From positions 7,254,001 through 7,318,000 of the forward strand of contig NC_043017.1 in NCBI RefSeq assembly GCF_006345805.1: 64,000 nucleotides of DNA, given 5' to 3'. This DNA is from Octopus sinensis (taxonomy: Eukaryota). Below, one piece after another: positions 1-57,709 of the stretch. The notes below the pieces were generated by a model that saw nothing but the letters and a program-made list of their open reading frames with translations, ran no database searches and was not told the DNA's origin. Position 1 is the first letter of the stretch. Each line of letters opens with the position of its first letter. The position numbers and the translations under genes were made by a program.

Positions 1-905
1 TTTTATTCAACGTATTCATCTCTCAGATTCACACACCTATCACAGCAGTTCCTCAGCTTCTCTAAACCCTGAAAAAAGAACTTGGGAGGTTGTAGCAACA
101 ATCACCCCTCAGAGTGAAATTTCATTGTGGAGGCGTTTCTTCAGTTGTGAAAAGAGGTGATAATCAGAAGAGTAAGGTCGGAGGTCTACCAATTCAAAGC
201 CAAAGCTGTGTAGTTTCTGTAGGGTTTCATGTGTTGGTACAACTACCCTACAAAAGCAGGGCATTATGGGTCAGCTTTCCATGGCATCAAAGCTTCATCC
301 AACAGAGACATGTAGTATTCTGCATTGATGGTGCACCCTTTGGCAGGTATTATAAAAGGGGTACTCCCAGAACACTGAAGCCAGAACCTTTCTAGTCATT
401 TTCCGGGTTCAAAACTTCTTGGGATGTGGTGAACAACCGTGACTCCACTCCATTGATTGCTGCTTGGTCCGGGGATGAAGCCTAGTTTCATCCAAGGTGA
501 CTAAACAAGCCATAAAATCAACCTCTCCTGCTGCAGACTGGTCCAAAATCACCTTTGATGCTGTCATCCTGATGTACTTGAGATCTGCATTCAGGCACCC
601 ACCTTGCAGAAAGCTTTCCTATGCCCAGAATGTTGTGGATGATGTGATTAACTCTTTCGCGGGAAATCCTCGGAGTCTCAGCTGAAACCCAGTAGTCCTC
701 GAGAATCATGACATGCACAACGTCCTCTGTAGTTGCAGAAGTTGGCTGTCCTGCCAAAATGATCAGTTAGCCTGATTTTTATTGTGGAGTAAGATGGACA
801 GCCATATTTCAAGACGTTCTTCATCTGGCCATGGATTTCTGCTGGTTGTTTGCCTTGCAGAAAGAGTAATTTCATTACTACTTGTACTTCAATTCTACCA
901 AAATA
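1..905 (-). pseudogene. Decayed mariner (DD34D-type) transposase with frameshifts and stops; the stop codon lies at the window edge
   Basis: Minus-strand translation across frames gives, in order: VMKLLFLQGKQPAEIHGQMKNVLKYGCPSYSTIK (HTH), ISRERVNHIIHNILGIGKLSARWVP, LVTLDET (first catalytic D), TKQQSMEW, KVLASVFW, TINAEYY, an HNA remnant of HDNA, PYS..SDYHLFSQLKK, and the C-terminus DRCVNLRDEYVE*. Confidence 0.9.
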
Positions 906-1268
906 CACTAGGAGCTGCCATCATGCATTAAATCTGCAAAAAAGAGAAAGGTATATTGTATACCATATCATGATATTCTGTATATCTTCTGACCTACCTC
1001 CCAGCTTTAACCTTAAAGCCAGGATCTTTTTTCAACATCACCTTTCTATATTTTCATACATTGTCCACTGTGAAAAAATTAAACCATTTCCTAATCCACC
1101 TTTGAACCTACAATATAAATGTTCTAAGGTAGACAGAGGTAAAGAAGAATATGCAAAGCAAGTCAATCCACATGACAACCAGCCTTAGAATCTTTCGCAT
1201 TATTGGGGTGGAAGGAACCTTGTATCAACATTTAAATTATCTTATCCCACGTATAATATTCAAAAACA

Positions 1269-1341
1269 GTCCTGAGTCAGATAGGGGCGAAGGGAAATCG
1301 TCAGGACATCAGTCGATCCACAAGATCATCATTCTCAGGAC
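1269..1341 (-). ncRNA. Box C/D snoRNA, family A copy 1
   Basis: Minus strand reads GTCCTGAG-A-ATGATGA(C)-TCTTGTGGATCGA-CTGA(D')-TGTC-CTGACGA(C')-TTTCCCTTCGCCCCTAT-CTGA(D)-CTCAGGAC. It has a perfect 8-bp terminal stem, and the D guide is complementary to 28S AUAGGGGCGAA. Confidence 0.9.
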
Positions 1342-1555
1342 AAAAACAAGAGAGAGAGAGAGAGGTTTATTGCAACAACCAGATTGTGAATAATAAAAGA
1401 AGGGAAACTATGTAAGTGAATTTTGTTTGCAAGATTCTATACGTGAGTTTGTATGTTGAAGTATATTCTGTTGTGCCTGGGGAAGTCATTCTATTTTAGT
1501 GCCTTATAATTTAACACACACCAGTAAAATTTCCCCCTATTACCTTTATCTTCCT

Positions 1556-1640
1556 AAAATTTTCGTTGCTTCTTGCAACCTTTTCAATAGTTTTGACTGT
1601 CAAAACTATTGAAAAGGTTGCAAGAAGCAGCGAAAATTTT
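1556..1640. repeat. Near-perfect 42-bp inverted repeat with a 1-nt spacer
   Basis: aaaattttcgttgcttcttgcaaccttttcaatagttttgac-t-gtcaaaactattgaaaaggttgcaagaagcagcgaaaatttt; one mismatch between the arms. Confidence 0.95.
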
Positions 1641-2004
1641 CAGAAAAAGAAAGGGACTCTCCCCAAACACAACAGTATATGTAAGTGAAAACATCAACGA
1701 AATGTCTTAAGTGAGACAAGGGCAAAAAGAATTTCATCAGGGAAATTCTTCAATCCATTGAAACAACCTCTGCATATTTCAAAAGTACCACATTATCTAT
1801 CACCATTTAACGTCCATGCTGGCAAGTTGAGGAGCGGTGCCAGACTCCAGCCTGATTCAGTACGGTTTCTACAGTTAGATGCCCCTTCTGTGAGGCCCAG
1901 TGCTCGAAAGGTGCTCTTTACCGTGATAGTTTCGCAACACCAGCAGCGGATATCACTCTAATACAACATGGCATTATTCTTATCTCACTCATTGCAGCAA
2001 TTAT

Positions 2005-2087
2005 AAACTGTCCCGAGTCAGATAGGGGCGAAGGGAAATCGTCAAGGTATCAGTCGATCCACAAGATCATCATCCTCAGGACAGTTT
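2005..2087 (-). ncRNA. Box C/D snoRNA, family A copy 2
   Basis: Minus strand reads AAACTGTCCTGAG-G-ATGATGA-TCTTGTGGATCGA-CTGA-TACC-TTGACGA-TTTCCCTTCGCCCCTAT-CTGA-CTCGGGACAGTTT. It has a 13-bp terminal stem with one G-U pair, and both guides are identical to copy 1. Confidence 0.9.
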
Positions 2088-2785
2088 TTACCAAATCTCA
2101 TCTCATTCAATGAGAAATCTTTTCTACTTTACCATGGTTGAATAAGGCTGAAGCAACCTAGAGGCATGCCTCCTACTTGCAAGTGTAAAACATTGAGCCA
2201 TCCAACAAGTATATTCAATTAAACGCAATGATACCCCTCTATTTCAAAACCAAACTATAGTAATTAAAAATGAAGTTCTTTTAAATGGCTGCCTATTCTT
2301 TGCAACATTTTTAGTCGCCTACAGGATGCCCCCCCCCCCCACCTCCTACAAAAGTTGCAGAAATTTTATTTTAGTCTGAGCCTGATTTTGCAAAAACACT
2401 GGAGAACAGCAGCCAGAACTTTTAGTACATGATGCACACAAACGAAACAATACATACCTATCTATACGCCCTTAGAAGAGCAACACGAAATCCAACAGAA
2501 GTTATAAACAAATTTTTGGGTCACACCAGTCAGATAATTTAGAACAGAAGGGGGACATGGAAATATCTTTTATTAAACTTTATACAAGGCAGGTTTAAAA
2601 AACCAATTCGCAAAAGGAACCTAAGAGAAACACTAACATTCAAACCGATCATCTTTGGTTTCTCGCACCTATCCAACAATATCATTCTAAAAATAAATCC
2701 CAAAGCTACGGGATAAAACATGACTCAAAACAAGGCTAATAAGTATCACATTTGACCGAATGCTGAAGGGCTATGGAGCTCACAG

Positions 2786-2891
2786 AATTAGTTTCTGATA
2801 CTCAGAAGAAGTGAACGAGTAGAGCTGTCATCACTGCTGAAAATAGCACAGTACTCCGACCTAGTGTTCATCATGATATCAGAAGCTAATT
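2786..2891 (-). ncRNA. Box C/D snoRNA B (unrelated to family A)
   Basis: Minus strand reads AATTAGCTTCTGATA-TC-ATGATGA(C)-ACACTAGGTCGGAGTA-CTGT(D'-like)-GCTATTTTCAGCA-GTGATGA(C')-CAGCTCTACTCGTTCACTTCTT-CTGA(D)-G-TATCAGAAACTAATT. It has a 15-bp terminal inverted repeat with one mismatch. Confidence 0.85.
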
Positions 2892-3395
2892 GGTAATGCT
2901 GACACTATAACAGTATGTCCATAAAACACCTTTACAATTGTTGACCGTCTATTAGCAGTATAAATGGATCAACGTCCTCCACAATTATCAGTCACCCCAT
3001 ACGACACTTTCCATACGTTATACAGTAAGTCCCCTGGACCCGAGTTGGTCTATGAACAAAGGCACACATTGTGCTTTCCCCCTGTTGGGTTATTCTCATT
3101 AAAAGTCAGGGATAAAAATCTTTTGAGACAAACGAAAGTGATCTAAATAACATGCAAAGCTGATATATAACATACAGTAATTTTTTTTCCACGCCACGAT
3201 GGCACTCAAATCTATATCAATCACAGCAAATTACATGTTTATGCTAGCGTGAAAAATAAAACAAGTGACACATCAAATATACAGGAGCGAAAAGAAAGCA
3301 ATCAGATAACGTATTTAATCTACTAAAACACCATATTCTGGTATTTCAGTTGTACCGTTACCACCAGTCACAGAAGACAAAAAAAACATTTACTA

Positions 3396-3477
3396 AAATG
3401 TCCCGAGTCAGATAGGGGCGAAGGGAAATCGTCAAGATAATCAGTCGATCCACAAGGTCATCACTCTCAGGACATTT
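3396..3477 (-). ncRNA. Box C/D snoRNA, family A copy 3
   Basis: Minus strand reads AAATGTCCTGAG-A-GTGATGA-CCTTGTGGATCGA-CTGA-TTATC-TTGACGA-TTTCCCTTCGCCCCTAT-CTGA-CTCGGGACATTT, with a 12-bp terminal stem. Confidence 0.9.
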
Positions 3478-4030
3478 CTATAGAACTACAACTGTACAGC
3501 GATATAGTATTTAGCAAGGGTAACATGTTGACCGTCACAGTAGGGTTGAGGTCAAACTTAGCAGACGGCAGTTACACAGATCACCCACCCAGGAGGAACG
3601 ACGAAATTTAATATCCTCATACCGGACTAATAGGACTTCTGTAAAAATTAAAACTAAGTAGCAAAACATCCCTAATTTAACTGGAGACAAATGAAAGAGC
3701 TACCATTAAAAACGAGCATACACTAAATGGCTACTAATTAATACACTAGTAAATTATGGCTTGATCGACACACGCGGACAGCTTGGGTACAAAAAAATGT
3801 ACGAATCCATCAAGCAGCATTTCTCACTTTAACGAAATCAAAAATTAACCGCAACACATATATTCGAAACTATATAAAATATAGAACTAAAAGGAAAATA
3901 AAACCCTGTACAAAAGCAGATTCTAGCAGTGGTATGGACAGCAGGGTAGGATTAAAAAAAAAAAACCAATTAGGACTGTACTGAATGTAAATTTCTCAGA
4001 CAAATGCCTCTAAGACAGCAATGTAAAAAA

Positions 4031-4110
4031 GTTGTCAGAACTTCGGAAGCACAAAAACTGCACCACGAAGAGAACAACTGATCTTCAGAATCGCGAATGT
4101 CATCACCGAA
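4031..4110 (-). ncRNA. Candidate box C/D snoRNA C
   Basis: GTGATGA (4106-4100), an 11-nt spacer, CTGA (4088-4085), a C'-like GTGGTGC, then CTGA (4038-4035); 72 nt from box C to box D. No clear terminal stem. Supported by sharing strand and spacing with the rest of the cluster. Confidence 0.45.
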
Positions 4111-7100
4111 ATAGAAAAAATCAGTAGCAGAATAAACAGCAAGAGACCACGTGGAGTAAAGTGTGAGAACGGTGAGCAACAGATGAAGCCACGTGGCTGC
4201 AGGTTACCGCCAGTTTCCACTCACGGCAGAACCGTTACAGTTATATCACAGTAAATCTATACACAAAATACTATATATTACATTAAAGCCATGTCTTTTT
4301 TCAAGAGATAAAAGATAAAAAAAAAAAAATTTAGCTTCACCGGAAAAGCGAAAAAAAATAAGTATATATTAATTCTAGTCATAAAATACATATTAATCTA
4401 TGAAGAAAGGGGATTAACGTTAATACATTATGAAAAAAAATAGTTCGATTACTAAAATGGCTAAGTCTTAAACTACGGATTGTCCTCAACATGCTGTATA
4501 TATCTTAATATACGCTACGATTACCCCCGGTCTTGCTGATTGACTTATAAAGCACATACCTCAGCAACAGCCAACAAACTGCTCCGCAAATGACCGAAAC
4601 ACGTACTCACACGCTTTATATACTCGGGATATACATCCGGTTTATATAATTGCAACATTAGACTATATAAAAACTTTGATAAAGACGGAACGAAACCAGT
4701 CCGTCTCCCTTCCCGTCACACTAATAACTATCGGAAGGAAAAAAAAAAGTTGCAAGAAATATTGTTTATTTATATACATGTAAACAATACTTGATTTATA
4801 AACTTTTAAAAGTTATTCTTCGCATGTGAAAACAAAGCAAGTCTATTATTGAGATTATATATTTAAAACACAATTATATATCTGATGAGTTGACAAGATT
4901 TCTATTTCGCTCGTAATCGGTAACACTTGAACAAGAGACAAAAAAAAACCCCAACAACAAAGACCAAGAAATAAACAAATAAAGCTCATGCAACAAGTAT
5001 TTAGCAGAAGTGTGATGTGATGATGAATTATCGATCTTTTAGCAACCATTTCGGGTTTTGTATGAGCACCTGTCAAGGCAGCGAGTTTACAATTAAACGA
5101 AGCGTAGCATGAGTAGATATACTGCTGGGTTCTACTCACTATGGATATGTTATTACCCCATAGGATGGGATTTTACGAATAGAAGAGGAAATAACAGCAG
5201 TCAGCCGTAGGTAAGATTGTTGAGCAGACAACCTTTCTATTCATTTACCTATTTTATCGACTTGTTTCGTATGAAAAAAGGGATTGAGATGTTCATCCCA
5301 GCTTCTCATCTCGTGTTCGACGCACACACAGACACTGTTTCTATGCTTCTCTCTTTCTTTCTCTCTGACGCACACACATTCACACACACAGACAGACACA
5401 GACAAACGGTTTATTCTTCCTTTCTCTTTCTCTCTGTCTCTTTATTATTTACGAGCGACTTTTCCAACTCAAAGATTTGTTTTGTTTCCACAAAGATAAA
5501 CGAAATTTATCATTTTAAAATAGTGTGTAACAACCAATAAGTCTCATCAATGTGTTGTCTTTGTTAATATGTAAACCCTCTTAAAACCTATATCTATTTA
5601 CAATACAGTGAAGTCCGGCAGGCATTATTAACCATCTCACTTATAAATCAATATATTTATCATCTGTTGTGTATAGACTTTCTTTGGCGTCACTTTGTTG
5701 TTTTCTTACTTCTCAATGTCATTCACATGTCTCTTGTTTTCTTCTTTCAATCTCCAATTATTGTATCACAACTGATAAATTAGTGCTAGCTACCCCTACA
5801 TCAGTCAGGTCCAATAACCATATTAATTTTTGTCAATATCTGGTTCTCCTTATCCGTGCCTCATATTTGGAAACCAATGCTGTCATCCTGGCCTTTCTGT
5901 TTTATTGTTACGTGTGTGGTGGGGAAAAGCCCGTAAATGTGTGATTTTTCCTAATCGTACCAACTTGTCTCAGTCAACAGTCTCACCTGAACACTTTTAT
6001 TTTCCATTGTCATTCATGTCCTCCTTGACCGTCACATCTAACTATTTATTATTCGAGAAATTACGACACAACCTGATGATATACAATGCATGTGAGTGCC
6101 TATTCCCTCTGTTAAACTCCAGAAATAGGCAATTATTCTCACACCTACACTGAAATATACATTACAATATATGTATAAATATATCAGACTTAACTGCAAT
6201 GTCATTCGTGTCCTCGCCTAATTAATACATCTTTGATAATCCCAGGTCATTAAAAATCGTACCCTAAACCCAAAACGGCAAATGGTTTTCAACGTCCGAA
6301 GAACGAAGTGCTTTCTTTCATTGTAAGATGTTTTAAAATTATCTCTTTTACTTTCATTTTAACTAGAATATTTTTATACTTTGATGGCCAGGCATCAACA
6401 CCAACTTTATTCATTAATAGAAAATCAATATGTATTTCTCAATTACCAAGAGTAAATGTAAAACCAAAGAATTACGTGTGTGTGTGTTGGTCGAGAACGT
6501 TGTTTAAAGTTTACTGTAACATTCTATTAACATAAATTTCGACACCCACTCCTGGTGCATTTGTTTATAATTTTTTTGTATCATTTTAGATAAACACTTT
6601 CTATAAGTTATAAAGTCTAAAAAAGACGAGTTCTAAATACAAACTACATATTGTGCTTTTGGAAAGGGTATACATTAGTAATCCGTTGTTTTTACTTCAA
6701 TGTTTACGTCCTGATCTAAATTTCAATGTGCTCAGTTGAATAATAACCTCGGTCAACCTGCCTTGGAATAAAATTAAAATAGGTTTTCTGTAAAGTTCCC
6801 TGTATATCCACTTGTAGATGGTTTCTGAAAGAATACCATTTACTGTTTAAAAGAACCAGGATAACTATCATATTCAGTACTATTGTTAATATTTTTTAAT
6901 TGTGAAATTTATACATATATAAAGCTGGGACTGTCTTGTAATAATTGTTATATAGTTGTTTGTGAAAGTTCCCCCGCCCCTCGTTTTTTATTCCAATATA
7001 TGTATAGGCCTGTTATAATTTTATTCATTTTTATTTCAACATATATATTAACTACATTTTACGGAAACCTCCTCATTATACATGCTTTTTGATGTTCAGG

Positions 7101-12411: not shown

Positions 12412-12823
12412 TATGTTAACCGTTAGGGATCAAAATTACCATATTTCAATCTTCGTTATTGTCACCCACGTTCAGTTTCTCTTTGACGTATTTGACATCT
12501 ATCTTCGTATAACTGTCACAAAAGAGGTGGGGGGGGTGAAGTTTCGTTATTATTTAGTTTTGTTTATTTATATATATTGTGGGAGGTCAAACTGTAAGTT
12601 CAGTGTTTGCGTGACAGCAATTAACTGAATAATTTCGGCTTTGTCATTGCAGTGTATGGAAAAATCCAAAGACACGGTTTTCGTTGACGTGACTGTGTTG
12701 GGTGTAAATAAAATATTCTGTAGATTTCACGTGTGTGTGTGTGTGTGTGTGTATGTATATATATATATGTGTGTGTATGTGTATATATATATATATGATG
12801 AGAAACACGCGTATGCATTCACA

Positions 12824-12874
<51 letters not shown>

Positions 12875-13148
12875 TCACGCTCATACATACATGCAGTCAG
12901 ACATGCGCACACATATATGTATTCACAGTTTCACAAACGCACTCATCGTACACGTACACACGCACTGATCATACACATATACATGCACAATTTCACACAC
13001 TGGTATACACGTACACGTATTCACACACCATTACACACATGCACTGGGTACACACGACATACACTCACACACGCAATAAACAAATTTGCATAATTATTTC
13101 TTCAATTAGGGATAAACAGTAGACTCAAAATAATTAATATTTCGAAAG

Positions 13149-27897: not shown

Positions 27898-28180
27898 CGT
27901 GCGTGTGTGTGCCATCATCACTACTACTACTGCTATCTGCCCCCCCCCACTCTCATCTAGCATATGTTCCAGAACTCGAGTTGTTTATGCAACCTTTGAT
28001 GAGTTTTACAGTATCCGCACGCTACACACGCACTCACTTGCTCACACACACACACACACAAGCACATACACATACACACACACATGCATAAGATGAATAG
28101 GTTCTACAGTTTCTGCTTGTTACACACATACACACAGGTATGTGTGTGTATGTGTATATATGTATATTTATATATATATA

Positions 28181-28235
<55 letters not shown>

Positions 28236-28502
28236 CGTGCGTGTGTGTGCCATCATCACTACTACTACTGCTATCTGCCCCCCCCCACTCTCATCTAGCA
28301 TATGTTCCAGAACTCGAGTTGTTTATGCAACCTTTGATGAGTTTTACAGTATCCGCACGCTACACACGCACTCACTTGCTCACACACACACACACAAGCA
28401 CATACACATACACACACACACACATGCATAAGATGAATAGGTTCTACAGTTTCTGCTTGTTACACACACACACAGGTATGTGTGTGTATGTGTATATATG
28501 TA

Positions 28503-28546
<44 letters not shown>

Positions 28547-28732
28547 TACATACATACTAACACACACATATACAAAATGAATTAGTTTCATTGCATTTGT
28601 TTATTACACACACACACACACACACACACAAGCACATACACATACACACACACATGCATAAGATGAATAGGTTCTACAGTTTCTGCTTGTTACACACACA
28701 CACAGGTATGTGTGTGTATGTGTATATATGTA

Positions 28733-35470: not shown

Positions 35471-35983
35471 GTTATGTGCAGCACTGAGTCACACGCAGAC
35501 GGCTAGTCTATAAGTGTTACTGGAATTCTGCCGACTGAGTCTGGAAGTCTGTTCTAACGTAAATAGGTGTGGGCTATAGATTTCTCTTTCTTCTTAGGGA
35601 AGTATTAAATGGTAAAACACGAGTAAATACAAACAAAACAAAAGTCGGAAATATATATTTTTAGATAAAAATTGGACCTAAGAGACTGGCTATCCAATAC
35701 TTGTGGAACCTCTGCCAAATATTCATCACCCTCATTTAACGTCCACTTTCCCATGCTTGCATGGGTCGGACGGAATCTGTTGAAGCAGATTGTCTGTGGC
35801 TCAGTGTCCCCCTTCTCCTCACCAGCCCTCACTTGTTTCTAAGCAAGGTAATATTTCCACATTGCTAGACATGTTTTTTTTTCTTTTCATGGAAGACTGA
35901 CAACGAGCAGCATTGCTTTCATAATGGTGATACCTCTTTTACAACCATCATGCGATACCTAAACAATGGAACAACGCAAACAC

Positions 35984-36019
<36 letters not shown>

Positions 36020-36029
36020 GACCATCCTC

Positions 36030-36675
36030 AAATACAACATATATATATATATATCATTATATATATATCATATATATATATCATATATATATATATATAT
36101 CATATATATATATATAATATATATCATATATATATATATATCATAATATATATATATATAATCATATATATATATATATATATCATATATATATATATAT
36201 ATATATCATATATATATCATATATCATATATATATATATATATATCATATATATATATATATATATCATATATAATATATATATATAATCATATATATAT
36301 ATCATATATATATATATATATATATCATATATATAATATATATATATATAATCATATATATATATATCATATAATATATATATATATTATATATCATATA
36401 TATATATATCATATATATATATATCATATATATAATATATCATATATATAATATCATATATATATATCATATATATATATATCATATATATATATATATC
36501 ATATAATATATATATCATATATATCATATATATATATCATATATATATATATCAATATATATATATCATATATAATATCATATATATCATATATATCATA
36601 TATATCATATATATCATATATATATCATATATATCATATATATATATATTATATCATATATATATATCATATATC
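36030..36675. repeat. Compound (AT)n/ATATC minisatellite, about 650 bp
   Basis: Direct reading; source of the 161-aa IY-rich ORF. Confidence 0.95.
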
Positions 36676-40819: not shown

Positions 40820-42050
40820 ATTGAACAAAATACTTTGCTGTATTTCTTCTAGTTTTCTATATTCTGAGTTCAAATCCTGTCGAGGCCATCTTTGCCTTTT
40901 ACATAGTTTCCAAGGTGTTTAAATTACCAAGATCACAACATTCCACCCCAATCCCACCCACTGAACAGGATATCGGTCTGTTGCAGGGTTGAATTCCAAC
41001 AATATTGATGGGAGCAGGCAAGTCGATTACATCGATCCCAGAACTTGACTGATGCTTTTCTTTATTAACTTTTTTCATTCTAAAGGAAAAAAGCAAAGTT
41101 TATGACTTTGCCAGGATTTGAACTCAAAACGTAAATAGCAGAAAAATGTTGCTAACCATTTTATCTGACAAGCTAATGACTCTACCAGCTTAACCACCTT
41201 TCTTATCCCTCTAGTATAAACTACCAGTCAACTACAGGGATCAGTTTAACAAACCCTTTCACTATAAAATTACTAACTTTGTGCTTAAATTAGAATTGAT
41301 TGTATAATGTGGTGGACCAGCAGAATCATTAGTTTTCTCTTGTTGTGAGTTCAAATCCTACTGAAGTTAAATTTACCTTTCTTCCCTCCGGGGGAAATAA
41401 AATAATGTACAAGTCAAGTGCTGCATTTGATGGTATTGACTAACCTTTCCCCCTAAAATTGCTGGCCTGGTGCCTGAATTGGAAACAGTTATTAAGGTAT
41501 TGAGCTGGCAGAATCGTTAGCATACTATACAAAATGTTTTATAACATTTCTTTTGGCTCTTTACATTCTGAGTTCAAATTCTGCTGGGGTTGATTTTGCC
41601 TTTCATTCTCTCAGGGTCAATAAAATAAGTACCAGTTGAGTCTAGGGGTCAATGTAATTGACTAACCCTCTCCCCTAAAATTTCACACTCTCTATCTGTT
41701 TTAGAAAGGACTGTTTAACTTCGTCAATGTCAACTTTTGCCTTTGACCCTTCCTGGGGTCGATAAAATCATTACCAGTTGAGCACAGGGGTTGATTTAAT
41801 CAACTTAGTTCCTCTTCTAAAATTGCTGGCCTTGTGCTAGAATTTGAAATTATCATTGGCGGCAAGCTGGCAGAATTGTTAGCACGCTGGGCGAAATGCT
41901 TAGAGGTATTTCGTCTGCCACTGTGTTCTGAGTTCAAATTCCATTGAGATCAACTTTGTCTTTCATCCTTTCGGGGTCAATAAAATAAGTATCAGTTGAA
42001 CACTGGGGTCGATGTAATCAACTCATCCCCACCCACCCCCAAGATGTCCT
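40820..42050 (+). mobile_element. Cluster of about six decayed Nin-like SINE copies, mostly plus strand
   Basis: Repeated ctgagttcaaat..ctttgcctttcat..taagtaccagtt..ggggtc units separated by short att-rich linkers; one minus-strand copy near 41020-41190. Confidence 0.75.
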
Positions 42051-42058
42051 TGTGGCAA

Positions 42059-42660
42059 AAATTATTATTATTATCATTATTATTACCATTATCATTATTA
42101 TTATCATTATTATTATTATTATTATCATCATTATTATCATTACCATTATCATTATTATTATCATTATTATTATTATTATTATCATCATTATTATCATTAC
42201 CATTATCATTACCATTATCATTATTATTATCATTATTATTATTATTATTATCATCATTATTATCATTACCATTATCATTATTATTATTATTATTATCATC
42301 ATTATTATCATTACCATTATCATTATTATTATCATTATTATTATCATTATCATTATTATTATTATCATCATTATTATTACCATTATCATTACCATTATCA
42401 TTATTATTATCATTATTATTATTATTATTATCATCATTATTATCATTACCATTATCATTATTATTATCATTATTATTATTATTATTATCATCATTATTAT
42501 CATTACCATTATCATTACCATTATCATTATTATTATCATTATCATTATTATTATTATCATCATTATTATCATTACCATTATCATTACCATTATCATTATT
42601 ATTATCATCATTATTATTATTATTATTATCATCATTATTATCATTACCATTATCATTATC

Positions 42661-42698
<38 letters not shown>

Positions 42699-42820
42699 CA
42701 TCATTATTATCATTACCATTATCATTATCATCATCATTATCATTATTATCATTATCATTATCATTATCATCATTATTATCATTATTATTATCATTATTAT
42801 TATTATCATTATCATCATCT
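42059..42820. repeat. (ATT/ATC/ACC)n trinucleotide array, about 760 bp, with higher-order units
   Basis: Recurring atcatcattattatcattaccattatc blocks; source of the poly-I, poly-L/S and poly-M/I ORFs. Confidence 0.95.
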
Positions 42821-43574
42821 CATAACATGGCTTCAGATTGAAAATGGGAATACATACTTAGGTGCTCTTCATCGTGTACTTTGACCTCAGGCAAAGTATC
42901 TTTCGCAGGATGCTCGTACTTTCATGAAGTGCTCTTTCAACTAACATGCAATGATAGGTTTATATTTAGCCAATTGATGTGCTGTTGTTGTCTTGTTAGG
43001 AATGGAGCCAAGGGCACCAATTACTATTGAAGCAAGAACAATCTGTGAGATATGTAATGTCAAATTATTTGGGTGGTGCTTAAAATGGAGAAGATCTCTT
43101 ATGGCTGAGAAGAAATACTCTGTAGTTTCTTTATTGTTTATCTTTTACTTGTTTACTGTGGCCATGCTGGAGCACTGCTTTAAGAAGTTTTGGTTGAACG
43201 AATTACAAGTAACTGTGGCTGAGAGAGAATATGGTAGAAAGATATCTGCATGTAATTCAAGGAGGCGATGATTTCAAGGATCTTGGGTACTATGTTGCTG
43301 ACAGAAAAGTACACTTTGTGCAGGCAAAGGACATGACCTAAGTACTACTACTTGGGGGTACCATGATTGTAAGATTGTGGTTTCAATTCCTGGACCGGGC
43401 GATGCATTGTGTTCTTGAGCAAAACACTTCATTTCATGTTGCTCCAGTCCACTCAGCTGGCAAAATTGAGTAACGCTGCAATGGACTGGCGTCCCGTCCA
43501 GCTGGGGGGAACACATACGCCATAGAAACTGGGAAACTGGGCCCATGAGCCTGGCTAGGCTTTAAAAGGGCACA

Positions 43575-51131: not shown

Positions 51132-51589
51132 CACAGGTATGACTGTGTGGTTGTTAAGAAGCTTGCTTCTCAATCATTTGGTTCTGAGTTCAGTCCCACT
51201 GTGTGGCACCTTGGGCAAGTGTCTTCTACTAGAGTCAAAGCTTTGTGAGTTGATTTGTAACAAATTGAACGAAGTTCATCGTGTGTGTGTGTGTGTGTGT
51301 GTGTTTGCTTGTCTTGACAGTGTGTGATTGTAGTAAACAAGAGTCACTGTCATACAAGCAGTGTCCATCGTTACTAACCTTCTGTGAAAACATGTCTGTC
51401 TGTATGAGGAAACGTTACCTTCCGTGGAAACAGTTAAGAATTGGCAACAGGAAGGGCATCCAACCAAACAAATTTTGCATCTCTCACTCGTTCTCATACT
51501 TTCACTCGCTCTCATACTCACTCGCTCCCACACTCTTAATTGCTCTCACACTCTCGGTCATACACACACACACACACACACACACACAT

Positions 51590-51920
51590 ACTCTGTCTCT
51601 CTCTCACTCTCTGTCTTACTCCCTCTCACACACACACTCATGCATGCACATACACACACACACTCTCCCCCCCTCTCTCTCTCTCTCTCTCCCCCCTCTC
51701 TCTCTCTCCCCCTCTCTCTCTCTCCCCCCTCTCTCTCTCCCCCCCTCTCTCTCCTCCCTCTCTCTCTCTCCCCCCCCCTCTCTCTCTCTCCCCCCTCTCT
51801 CTCTCCCCCCTCTCTCTCTCTCCCTCTCTCTCCCTTACTCTCTCTCCCTTTCTCCCCCTCTCCCTCCCTCCCTCCCTCTCCCTCTCTCCCTCTCCCTCTC
51901 TCCCTCTCTCTCTCTCACAC
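51590..51920. repeat. Polypyrimidine (CT/CCT)n tract, about 330 bp
   Basis: Direct reading. Confidence 0.95.
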
Positions 51921-54555
51921 ACACATACACATACAGGTAATACAGTTGATCCAACACTTAGTACCCATTTGTAGACCATATCCAAAAGGGGTACTCGGTT
52001 ATCCAATTACATATACACAAATGTACAGTTCTCCCCGACACCCACACACTCACACACCTTTATCTATACCCCTACCCCCATTACACAATATGGTAAATGT
52101 GCCATTATTGAATTATTTCTGAAAGATAGTGGGAAAATAATTATGTGTGTGTGTGTATGTGTGTGTATTTTATCTTCTGCTCTTTGATAATTAATAAAGA
52201 TACAGTTAATGGGCAGCAGGTGCTGTTTAGTTGCCATGTTAACTAATTAAACTAAATTGATCTTCTATTAGTACAGCAAGTAAATATAATGAATAAATAA
52301 AAAATTTTTTAAAACGTTTAGTTTTGGCTGTTGGCTTTGTAATTGGTTGGTACCAAACTAAAGAAACAGCACTACACATGCACACACACACACACGTAAT
52401 TGATTTGATGCCATAGAAACTAAAGAAATGATTTAATGTGTGTATGTATATATATATATATATATATTTATATATACATGTAATATATATATATATATAT
52501 GTAATATATGTGTGTGTGTGTCACAATATATGGATTCAAGTAATCTTGTAGTACTCATAAAAAAAGCTCAACGTATCATTTTACAAAACAGAATATATCG
52601 TGCAATACAAGAGAAAACAACAAAGAGTGTAGAAAGTTACAGAAAATATTGTCATGATATTAGAATTTTCTTATTGTTAAATAAAATTTCATCAAACTAT
52701 TTCCCTGTCATTTAATGACTTTATCATCATCATCGTTTAACGTCCGTTCTCCATGCTAGCATGGGTTGGACGGTTCGACCGGGGAATCTGGGAAGCTAGA
52801 AGGCTGCACCAGGCTCCAGTCTTATCTGGCAATGTTTCTACAGCTGGATGCCCTTCCTAACGCCAACCACTCCGTGAGTGTAGTGGGTGCTTTTTACATG
52901 CCACCTGCATAGGTGCCAGGTGAGGCTGGCAACGGCCACGGTCGGATTGGTGCATTTTACGTGCCACTGGCACGGAAGCCAGTCGAGGCGGCACTGGCAT
53001 TGGCCACGATTCGGATGGTGCTTTTTACATGACACCGGCATGGAAGCCAGTTGAGGCGGCGCTATAAATGTGCAGGAATGGTTGTGTGGTAAGAAGCTTG
53101 TTTCAGTTCCACTGCGTGGCACCTTCGCCAAGTGTCTTCTACTATAGCTTTGGGCCGACCAAAGCCTTGTGAGTGGATTTGGTAGGCGGAAACTGAAACT
53201 CATGGTATATATATATATATACGTTTGTGTTTGTGCGTCTGTCCCCCACACCATCGCTTGACAACTGTTGCCAGTGTGTTTATGTCCCCATTACTTAAAG
53301 GTTTGGCAAAAGAGACCAAAAGAATAAGTACCAGGCTTACAAAGAATAAGTCCTGGGGTCGATTTGTTCAACTAAAAAGGCAGTGCTCCAGCATGGCTGC
53401 AGTAAAATGACTGAAAGAAATAGAGATGACTGTGCTGGTATGGTCATGTGATGTGTATGAATGAGGACAGGTGTGTAAAGAAGTGCCGATCTCTAGCTGG
53501 AAGGAACCTATGGTAAAGGTGGACCCAGAAAGACATGGGATGAAGTGGTGAAGCACAATCTCTGAACTTTTAGCTTCACAGAGGCAATGACAAGTGAATG
53601 AGACCAACTCATGCCAGCATGGAACATGGACATTAAATTGTTATATATATTATAAATATTAAAAACAATACATTCAAAAGAGATATCTCAAGAGTTCAAT
53701 CACTACTACCATCCACAAGTCACTTTCAGGGCACTTGACCATTTAACATCCTACTACTATCATACCACTTCTGCATTCTCCTTCTCCACCTCTGCCAAGA
53801 ATTTACAATGACCTCGAACCCACAAGAGAGACGGAGACAGGCAGAAACAAGGAAAATGCCTCTTGTCTTTGAATACCATTCAAATATTCTTTTAAAAAAC
53901 TTTTCATTTAATTTTTCCAAAATTTAATTGTTTTCCATACTTAGAGTTGAAAAAGTCTCAACGACTGAAACCTGTACTAAAATGTTTTTTATGATAAAAT
54001 TATTTTAGCATTTTCTACTTTGACTTTTTTTCCTTATATATTTATATATATATATATATATTGTTTGTTTTTATGTTCAGGTATAATAAAAACTATTTTA
54101 CATTAGGAGAGTATTATAGTTTTCTGGAAGCATTGTGTATTGTTTGTGAAATATAATGTGTCTTGAATGGCACAACAATGCAGAATGGACTATAATAGCT
54201 GTCATAGTTTAATTATAGTCTGATACGATATTTTGGAATATAAAAATTCCTTCTTCAGATATTGCTAGGAATTGATTGAGTCATTGCTATAATTGGTTTT
54301 CCAACAGTTGCTGAAATTTTACATTAATCTGATGGGTTACTAATTCATTTGTAGAGTACAAATTTACTATTCTTATACAAAAATTGTTGATTGTAACTTC
54401 GAAGTTTCTGCCAGCTAAGCCATCAGATAATGCCGAAGAGTGCATGCTCAAAATGTAAAAAGACTTTCTTACTTCCTGAGCATTAAACTAATACATCTGT
54501 TTGTTGTCCACACACCCATCTTCATCTTTTTTTTTTTGTAAATTCCCACTATACA

Positions 54556-57160: not shown

Positions 57161-57354
57161 ATTTGATGTTGCTCAAAGGGGTACAGAACCAGTATGATGG
57201 GACAGAGGTAAACTAGTATATGCTGTCAAGCCCTGCTGCTGATATTGGGGGTTGCGTTGACCCAGGCTTAGGATAGGGCTCGCCTCTTTGAGCTGAGAAA
57301 TGAATGGAATACCTAGTGTGTGTTTTGTTGTGGTTACCTATGCCTAAGGACGGT

Positions 57355-57612
57355 GATACTGAGGATGAGCACGATGAGGATGAGCACGATGATGATGAGC
57401 ACGATGATGATGAGCACGATGATGATGATGAAGAGGATGATGATGATAAGGATGATGATGATAAGATGATGAAGAGGATGAAGATGATAAGAAGATGAAG
57501 AGGATGAAGATGAGAATGATGAGGATTAGAAGGATGATGATGAAGAGGATGATGAGGATGTTGAGGTGGTGATGATGCTGATGAGGATGAGAAGGATGAT
57601 GATAATGATGTG
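57355..57612. repeat. (GAT/GAG)n array with four gatga(g/t)gagcac units
   Basis: Direct reading. Confidence 0.9.
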
Positions 57613-57709
57613 GACGGGCAAAATGCCTGATTCACTGCTCGGAAAATGTCTATTACATTTGTGATATTGGTTGTTGTTCAAGTGCTCTTGACCCCTTGCT
57701 ACTAATCTA

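What the first reader, a model, noticed from the sequence alone, without database searches (positions are those of the whole stretch)
1269..3477. Triplicated box C/D snoRNA predicted to methylate a possibly unrecorded 28S rRNA guanosine
Three dispersed minus-strand copies of about 75 nt (1269-1341, 2005-2087, 3396-3477) keep boxes C, D', C' and D and both guides, while the sequence between copies is unrelated. The terminal stems have copy-specific but still complementary extensions (AAACT/AGTTT, AAAT/ATTT), which argues for selection on structure. The D guide TTCGCCCCTAT is the exact complement of AUAGGGGCGAA in the conserved LSU motif GGGUAUAGGGGCGAAAGACUAAUCG. By the D+5 rule the target is the second G of AUAGGGG, the yeast G811 equivalent. 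The yeast sites I recall in this segment are Gm805, Am807 and Am817, so this may be a lineage-specific modification. The novelty is inference.
Basis: partly seen in the sequence, partly recalled or inferred. Interest (0 to 1): 0.8.

Follow-up and report, generated by a model that had tools for sequence, protein, structure and literature searches.

The report
Three-copy SNORD80-type methylation guide snoRNA
The three repeats are real copies of a small nucleolar RNA, but its predicted ribosomal RNA target is the well-known conserved site yeast Gm908 / human Gm1612, not a new one, so the finding is ordinary.

Summary
Three minus-strand copies (1269-1341, 2010-2082, 3400-3473) share an exact 48-49 nt core. 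They have perfect C, D', C' and D boxes, identical guides and 8-13 bp terminal stems. The bodies are 92-93% identical, while the flanks are at random-level identity.

The novelty claim fails on a numbering error. That G is yeast 25S G908, not "G811". Four Rfam consensus sequences carry the same guide directly before box D: snR60/Z15, nematode ceN111, Tetrahymena TtnuCD13 and fly Me28S-Gm1083. snR60 guides Am817 and Gm908. In 120 eukaryotic LSU loci the two snR60-type target nucleotides lie exactly 91 nt apart (908-817). In fungal-type loci the G sits 905-906 nt from the LSU 5' end. The site equals human Gm1612 (SNORD80) and fly G1083, which is also guided by three paralogues.

The copies sit in what looks like a multi-snoRNA host gene, together with a SNORD15-like snoRNA and one orphan C/D snoRNA.

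Only the strictly conserved D' guide (CTTGTGGATCGA) remains unexplained. It no longer fits the ancestral A817 site, and no target was found.

Verdict: a new member of a known kind, of low interest.

The parts
1269..1341 (-). snoRNA copy 1 (73 nt). Stem 1341-1334 / 1276-1269; box C 1332-1326; D' guide 1325-1313; D' 1312-1309; C' 1303-1298; D guide 1297-1281; box D 1280-1277.
   Evidence: weak Rfam hits RF00309 21.2 bits and RF01615 17.6 bits
2005..2087 (-). snoRNA copy 2 (body 2010-2082; extended 13-bp stem 2087-2075 / 2017-2005). Box C 2073-2067; D' guide 2066-2054; D' 2053-2050; C' 2044-2039; D guide 2038-2022; box D 2021-2018.
3395..3478 (-). snoRNA copy 3 (body 3400-3473; extended stem 3478-3466 / 3407-3395). 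Box C 3463-3458; D' guide 3457-3445; D' 3444-3441; C' 3434-3429; D guide 3428-3412; box D 3411-3408.
3991..4111 (-). SNORD15-like box C/D snoRNA in the same putative host gene. Its D guide GAGGCATTTGT pairs with LSU CCAAAUGCCUC.
   Evidence: Rfam RF00067 47.5 bits, E 1.3e-9 on the 151-nt stretch, below gathering score 75; 10-bp match to LSU loci
2795..2882 (-). Further box C/D snoRNA candidate 'X': ATGATGA ... TGATGA ... CTGA with a 9-bp terminal stem. No target found.
4560..4625 (-). Putative host-gene start: TATAAAG box about 4620 and a first mini-exon ending at the 5' splice site GCTGAG|GTATGT about 4561/4560. Inferred from sequence only.
   Evidence: read; no expression data
1922..1957 (-). 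Putative 36-nt host-gene mini-exon: ...ttgtattag|AGTGATATCC...ATCACG|gtaaag. It lies about 52 nt downstream of copy 2. Inferred.
   Evidence: read

Best explanation
These are three paralogous genes for a canonical box C/D snoRNA. They most likely lie in successive introns of a multi-snoRNA host gene on the minus strand.

The RNA would assemble with fibrillarin, Nop56, Nop58 and Snu13. Its D guide (TTCGCCCCTAT, directly before box D) forms an 11-bp duplex with LSU rRNA 5'-AUAGGGGCGAA-3'. This places the second G at the D+5 position for 2'-O-methylation.

That nucleotide is the conserved site yeast 25S Gm908 = human 28S Gm1612 = Drosophila 28S G1083 (G1108 in the revised numbering). The snoRNA is therefore the functional orthologue of snR60, SNORD80, Me28S-G1083 and ceN111.

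Shown: the anatomy, the triplication, conservation of the body but not the flanks, guide-target complementarity, and the identity of the site.

Inferred: expression, intronic processing, and actual methylation.

The D' guide (CTTGTGGATCGA) is equally conserved, but it has lost the ancestral fit to the A817 site. Its target is unknown.
For: - The exact triplicate is not expected by chance.
- Boxes are canonical and terminal stems are 8-13 bp. The fold z-scores are -2.1 to -3.2.
- All substitutions between copies fall outside the boxes and guides. Flanks are at random identity.
- The D guide gives 11/11 Watson-Crick pairs with ATAGGGGCGAA in the fetched LSU loci.
- The Rfam consensus of RF00309 (snR60/Z15) ends ...GUCUUUCGCUCCUAU-CUGA. 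That of ceN111 ends ...UUUCGCCCCUAU-CaGA, and that of TtnuCD13 ends UUCGCUCCUAUCUGA. This is the same guide in the same position.
- snR60 guides 25S Am817 and Gm908.
- The A opposite position 5 of the RF00309 D' guide and the G opposite position 5 of its D guide are 91 nt apart in 120 of 121 LSU matches. The bases at offsets corresponding to G805, A807, G867 and A876 also fit.
- The G lies 905-906 nt from the LSU 5' end in fungal-type loci, and never less than 905 in any locus.
- SNORD80 guides human G1612. Fly Me28S-G1083 has copies a, b and c in one host gene, Nop60B.
- A SNORD15-like snoRNA and another C/D candidate lie on the same strand between and upstream of the copies.
Against: - Rfam scores are well below the gathering thresholds: 21.2 vs 41, 17.6 vs 43, 13.4 vs 48. 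The gathering-mode scan of the window finds nothing.
- Outside the D guide and the boxes there is little sequence similarity to the known families, so common descent as opposed to convergence of the guide is inferred.
- There are no expression or methylation data.
- This species' own rRNA was not available.
- The D' guide does not match the second target of snR60/SNORD80.
- The host-gene exons are read by eye.
Confidence: 0.85

Rival explanations
1. One reading: the snoRNA guides a lineage-specific 28S methylation, previously unrecorded, at a G equivalent to 'yeast G811'.
For: The D+5 logic and the complementarity are correct. No Rfam family reaches its gathering score.
Against: The numbering is wrong. 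The targeted G is G908-equivalent by three tests. The first is the guide of the snR60 family. The second is the 91-nt spacing to the A817-equivalent. The third is absolute position 905-906 in fungal-type LSU. The site is known to be methylated in yeast, human and fly.
Confidence: 0.02
2. The copies are dead snoRNA-derived retrocopies or repeat fragments, neither expressed nor functional.
For: There are no expression data. The region is repeat-rich, with a Mos1 mariner remnant at 1-900, a palindrome at 1559-1637 and microsatellites.
Against: All boxes, both guides and the stem are intact in all three copies, while the flanks have drifted to random identity. There are no poly-A tails or target-site duplications. 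The copies share orientation with two other snoRNA candidates and lie 50-75 nt upstream of plausible 3' splice sites. There are only three copies in 64 kb, all within 2.2 kb.
Confidence: 0.05
3. The snoRNA acts mainly through its D' element, either on a lineage-specific target or as an rRNA-folding chaperone. Gm908-type guidance would then be redundant.
For: The D' guide has no change over 12 nt in three paralogues, although the adjacent 5-6 nt spacer differs at most positions. snR60 has been proposed to help fold the hairpin between its two targets.
Against: No target with at least 10 bp was found in 415 kb of eukaryotic rDNA. The best matches are at chance level. The D guide is just as conserved and has a perfect canonical target.
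Confidence: 0.08

Closest known systems
SNORD80 (human U80) / yeast snR60 / Rfam RF00309 snosnR60_Z15 (clan CL00070)
   Same: It is a box C/D snoRNA with a D guide ...UUCGC(C/U)CCUAU directly before box D. That guide targets the second G of LSU AUAGGGGCGAAAG (yeast Gm908, human Gm1612). It appears to be intron-encoded in a multi-snoRNA host gene, as SNORD80 is in GAS5 (GAS5 is my own knowledge, not tested here).
   Different: The score is only 19-21 bits against a gathering score of 41. The complementarity is 11 bp rather than about 15 bp. The D' guide does not fit the A817/A1521 site, because it has an A.A mismatch at position 5 and several G.U pairs. The RNA is shorter (73 nt against a 98-position model).
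Drosophila snoRNA:Me28S-G1083a/b/c (Rfam RF00528; renamed snoCD11 / CD28 series)
   Same: The methylation site is the same, and there are three paralogues in the introns of one host gene. The second guide is not the A817-type guide.
   Different: The Rfam score is 13.4 bits against 48. The fly host is Nop60B. The fly D' guide targets A1117, 9 nt downstream of the G, and the D' guide here does not fit that site.
Nematode ceN111 (RF01615) and Tetrahymena TtnuCD13 (RF02289)
   Same: The guide core UUCGC(C/U)CCUAU is identical and sits next to box D. ceN111 is of similar size (about 70 nt).
   Different: Scores are below threshold (16-17.6 bits against 43; 13.1 against 75). The D' guides differ.

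Membership tests
Box C/D snoRNA (general class) | Box C RUGAUGA near the 5' end and box D CUGA near the 3' end, brought together by a terminal stem (kink-turn) | tested here: met
   All three copies have (R)TGATGA and CTGA flanked by an 8-13 bp stem.
Box C/D snoRNA (general class) | Internal D' and C' boxes, and a guide of at least 10 nt directly upstream of D or D' that is complementary to a target RNA, with the target at position 5 | tested here: met
   D' is CTGA and C' is TGACGA. The D guide forms 11 contiguous Watson-Crick pairs with LSU ATAGGGGCGAA starting at position 1, and position 5 is a G.
Box C/D snoRNA (general class) | Stable 60-100 nt RNA bound by fibrillarin, Nop56, Nop58 and Snu13 | not testable with these tools
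   No expression or CLIP data are available.
SNORD80 / snR60 / Me28S-G1083 / ceN111 group (guides for LSU Gm908 = Gm1612) | A guide that places the second G of LSU AUAGGGGCGAAAG at D+5 | tested here: met
   The identity of the site with yeast G908 rests.
SNORD80 / snR60 / Me28S-G1083 / ceN111 group (guides for LSU Gm908 = Gm1612) | Covariance-model score at or above the Rfam gathering threshold | tested here: not met
   RF00309 19-21 bits (gathering 41); RF01615 16-17.6 (43); RF00528 13.4 (48); nothing in gathering mode.
SNORD80 / snR60 (two-target members) | D' guide complementary to GGUGAACUAUGCC, with the second A (yeast A817, human A1521) at D'+5 | tested here: not met
   CTTGTGGATCGA against GUGAACUAUG gives an A.A mismatch at position 5 and three G.U pairs. 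This is a hand alignment of the consensus against the sequence. No such hit appeared in the scan, which required position 5 to pair.
SNORD80 / snR60 / Me28S-G1083 / ceN111 group (guides for LSU Gm908 = Gm1612) | 2'-O-methylation present at the predicted G in this organism | not testable with these tools
   Needs RiboMeth-seq or a low-dNTP primer extension.

The most novel reading that the evidence does not exclude
The D' guide (5'-CTTGTGGATCGA-3') is invariant in three paralogues whose flanks and inner spacer have fully diverged. It may direct a lineage-specific 2'-O-methylation of a U in an RNA carrying 5'-UCGAU*CCACAAG-3'. That RNA could be a variable rRNA segment, a spacer, an snRNA or a tRNA of this animal, and the site would have no counterpart in yeast, human or fly. 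This would be a retargeted second guide in an otherwise ancient snoRNA.
Probability: 0.2. Interest if true: 0.3.

Novelty: new member of a known kind. Interest (0 to 1): 0.12.

Why it matters
It matters little beyond annotation. The result adds a probably molluscan or other invertebrate orthologue to one of the most widely conserved methylation guides, found in yeast, plants, ciliates, nematodes, flies and mammals. It also shows a multi-snoRNA host gene with local triplication, parallel to the three fly copies.

The case is useful as a caution. An apparently new modification site arose only from a 97-nt numbering slip, and Rfam gathering thresholds miss short, diverged snoRNAs whose guide nevertheless identifies them. 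The retargeted D' guide is the one open point.

Tried and rejected
- **Rfam in gathering mode on the whole window:** no hit. Only E-value mode on short stretches exposed the family resemblance.
- **LSU motif scan of viral contigs:** nothing. The metagenome scan gave 120 LSU loci.
- **D' guide target search:** I ran a snoscan-like scan of 415 kb of eukaryotic rDNA on both strands. No site gave at least 10 bp.
  - The best sense-strand hits share only UCGAUCC (7 bp), with LSU GUCAGUCGAUCCUAAG and GGCCUAUCGAUCCUUU.
  - Mapping the latter to yeast Um2724 gave mixed support, so I dropped it.
- **Best 12/13 'hit' of the D' guide:** it lies on the antisense strand of 5.8S in a few protists, so the guide resembles 5.8S in sense. 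About 2 such hits are expected by chance in that search space, so I rejected it.
- **D' pairing with UCGAACCAU, 14 nt downstream of the D target:** 8 of 9 pairs with an A.A mismatch at position 5. My estimate of the chance probability is about 0.3 within +/-40 nt, so I rejected it.
- **Literature on ceN111 and on cephalopod or mollusc snoRNAs:** nothing useful.
- **Targets for snoRNA candidate 'X' (2802-2874):** none convincing.
- **Species identification:** not attempted, because it does not bear on the verdict and would cost a large protein search.

Full report
**Observation**

Reading 1100-3700 on the minus strand shows three near-identical units of about 73 nt.

- A 48-49 nt pattern spanning D' guide, D', spacer, C', D guide and D matches exactly three times (1277-1324, 2018-2065, 3408-3456). 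Zero matches are expected from shuffles.
- The 15-mer TTCGCCCCTATCTGA, with up to two mismatches, occurs nowhere else in the 64 kb.
- Each unit reads GTCCTGAG-(RR)TGATGA-(Y)CTTGTGGATCGA-CTGA-spacer-TGACGA-TTTCCCTTCGCCCCTAT-CTGA-CTCRGGAC.
- A simple C/D scanner recovers the three units with terminal stems of 8, 13 and 13 bp.
- Single-sequence folds give the terminal stem in all three, with z-scores of -2.4, -3.2 and -2.1.
- The consensus fold keeps the stem. One pair changes on both sides (C-G in copy 2, A-U in copy 3), and the U-A / U.G change in the core stem is tolerated. Copy 1 lacks the outer extension.

Body identity between copies is 92-93%. Sixty- and 140-nt flanks on either side are 0.43-0.58 identical, against 0.47 +/- 0.05 for random window segments. 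Every substitution lies in one of four places. These are the two bases 5' of TGATGA, the base 3' of box C, the D'-C' spacer, or a stem position that still pairs. This is the signature of purifying selection on boxes, guides and stem.

**What it is**

Rfam at gathering thresholds finds nothing in the window. With permissive thresholds on short stretches, each copy gives its best match to RF00309 (snR60/Z15/Z230/Z193/J17; 19-21 bits, gathering 41). Weaker matches go to nematode ceN111 (16-17.6 bits), Tetrahymena TtnuCD13 and fly Me28S-Gm1083.

The scores are weak, but the printed alignments are informative. The RF00309 consensus ends ...GUCUUUCGCUCCUAU-CUGA. The ceN111 consensus ends ...AUUUCGCCCCUAU-CaGA, and the TtnuCD13 consensus ends UUCGCUCCUAUCUGA. 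The guide of the window's snoRNA, in the same place directly before box D, is thus already present in described families from fungi, plants, nematodes, ciliates and insects.

**Which nucleotide is targeted**

Four lines of evidence show that this is a numbering slip.

- **Known targets of snR60.** The yeast modification table lists snR60 as the guide for 25S Am817 and Gm908. It lists no site between 817 and 867.
- **Guide geometry of the family.** In the RF00309 consensus, the D' guide GCAUAGUUCAA|CUGA puts the second A of GUGAACUAUGC at position 5. The D guide puts the second G of AUAGG(G/A)GCGAAAGAC at position 5.
- **Spacing in real LSU sequences.** I fetched 120 eukaryotic LSU stretches from metagenomes with a pattern spanning both motifs.
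  - In 120 of 121 matches the two target nucleotides are exactly 91 nt apart, which equals 908-817.
  - With the A taken as 817, the bases at the offsets of G805, A807, G867 and A876 are G, A, G and A in 116-121 of 121 matches. U898 is U in 75.
- **Absolute position.** Here I assume that yeast 25S starts GUUUGACCUC, which is my own knowledge. The G then lies at 905-906 in two fungal-type loci and at 905 or more in all 14 loci that include the LSU 5' end.

The target is therefore the yeast Gm908 equivalent. Its human counterpart is 28S Gm1612, guided by SNORD80. The fly counterpart is G1083 (G1108 in the revised reference), guided by Me28S-G1083a, b and c in the host gene Nop60B.

The D guide of the window's snoRNA forms 11 contiguous Watson-Crick pairs with ATAGGGGCGAA in the fetched loci.

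**Mechanism**

Shown:
- canonical C/D architecture
- a guide of adequate length abutting box D
- the target G at D+5
- selective conservation of the body

Inferred:
- the RNA is excised from introns
- it assembles into a fibrillarin snoRNP
- it methylates the 2'-OH of the G908-equivalent during early pre-60S assembly

**The D' guide**

In snR60 and SNORD80 the D' guide targets A817/A1521. Here CTTGTGGATCGA aligns to that position in the model. Against GUGAACUAUG, however, it has an A.A mismatch exactly at position 5 and three G.U pairs, so it is unlikely to serve that site.

A scan of 415 kb of rDNA from diverse eukaryotes found no site of 10 bp or more. Only 7-bp cores (UCGAUCC) occur in two conserved LSU segments. 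An attempt to equate one of them with yeast Um2724 was inconclusive.

The guide is nevertheless invariant across three copies whose adjoining spacer differs at most positions. It is probably constrained, and its target may lie in a lineage-specific sequence that I could not access. The fly homologue also uses a second guide that differs from the A817 guide.

**Genomic setting**

- Upstream on the same strand lies a SNORD15-like snoRNA at 3991-4111 (47.5 bits, E 1.3e-9 on the stretch, gathering 75). Its D guide pairs over 10 bp with LSU CCAAAUGCCUC.
- Between copies 3 and 2 lies another well-formed C/D candidate at 2802-2874, with a 9-bp stem and no target found.
- A TATAAAG box and a GCTGAG|GTATGT donor at about 4620-4560, together with short AG...GT-bounded segments 50-75 nt downstream of the copies, suggest a host gene with mini-exons and one snoRNA per intron. 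An example is 1957-1922, ttgtattag|...ATCACG|gtaaag. This is read by eye and has not been tested.
- Downstream, at 1-900, is a decayed Mos1-type mariner remnant.

**Verdict**

The feature is real and almost certainly functional. It is a new member of an old, widely conserved guide family for a known modification. The claim of an unrecorded methylation site is not supported.

Noticed in passing
window 3991-4111 (-): A SNORD15-like box C/D snoRNA (Rfam RF00067, 47.5 bits, E 1.3e-9 locally, below gathering 75). Its D guide GAGGCATTTGT pairs with LSU CCAAAUGCCUC. An internal CTGA preceded by CTTCCGAAGTT also pairs over 10 bp with LSU AACUUCGGGA.
   Followed up: partly
window 2795-2882 (-): A well-formed box C/D candidate with a 9-bp terminal stem, boxes ATGATGA, TGATGA and CTGA, and guides ACACTAGGTCGGAGTA and CAGCTCTACTCGTTCACTTCTT. 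There is no convincing Rfam family and no rRNA target in 120 eukaryotic rDNA loci.
   Followed up: partly
window 1559-1637 (both strands): A near-perfect 78-nt palindrome with 38-nt arms, in the putative intron between copies 2 and 1. It scores 40-57 bits against several unrelated miRNA hairpin models on both strands, which is a generic hairpin effect. It is a single copy in the window. It may be a foldback or MITE-like element, or a hairpin RNA.
   Followed up: partly
window 1-900 (-): A decayed Mos1/mariner-type transposase remnant, broken by stops and frameshifts. One piece matches Pfam HTH_48 (E 2e-4, just below the cut-off).
   Followed up: partly
window 12600-13100, 28100-28550, 35950-36450, 42000-42850, 51300-52100, 57200-57650: There is abundant microsatellite and low-complexity DNA (CA/TG, TA-rich, CTC-type). 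It produces all the long 'ORFs' in the window, and no convincing protein-coding exon was seen among ORFs of 120 aa or more.
   Followed up: no
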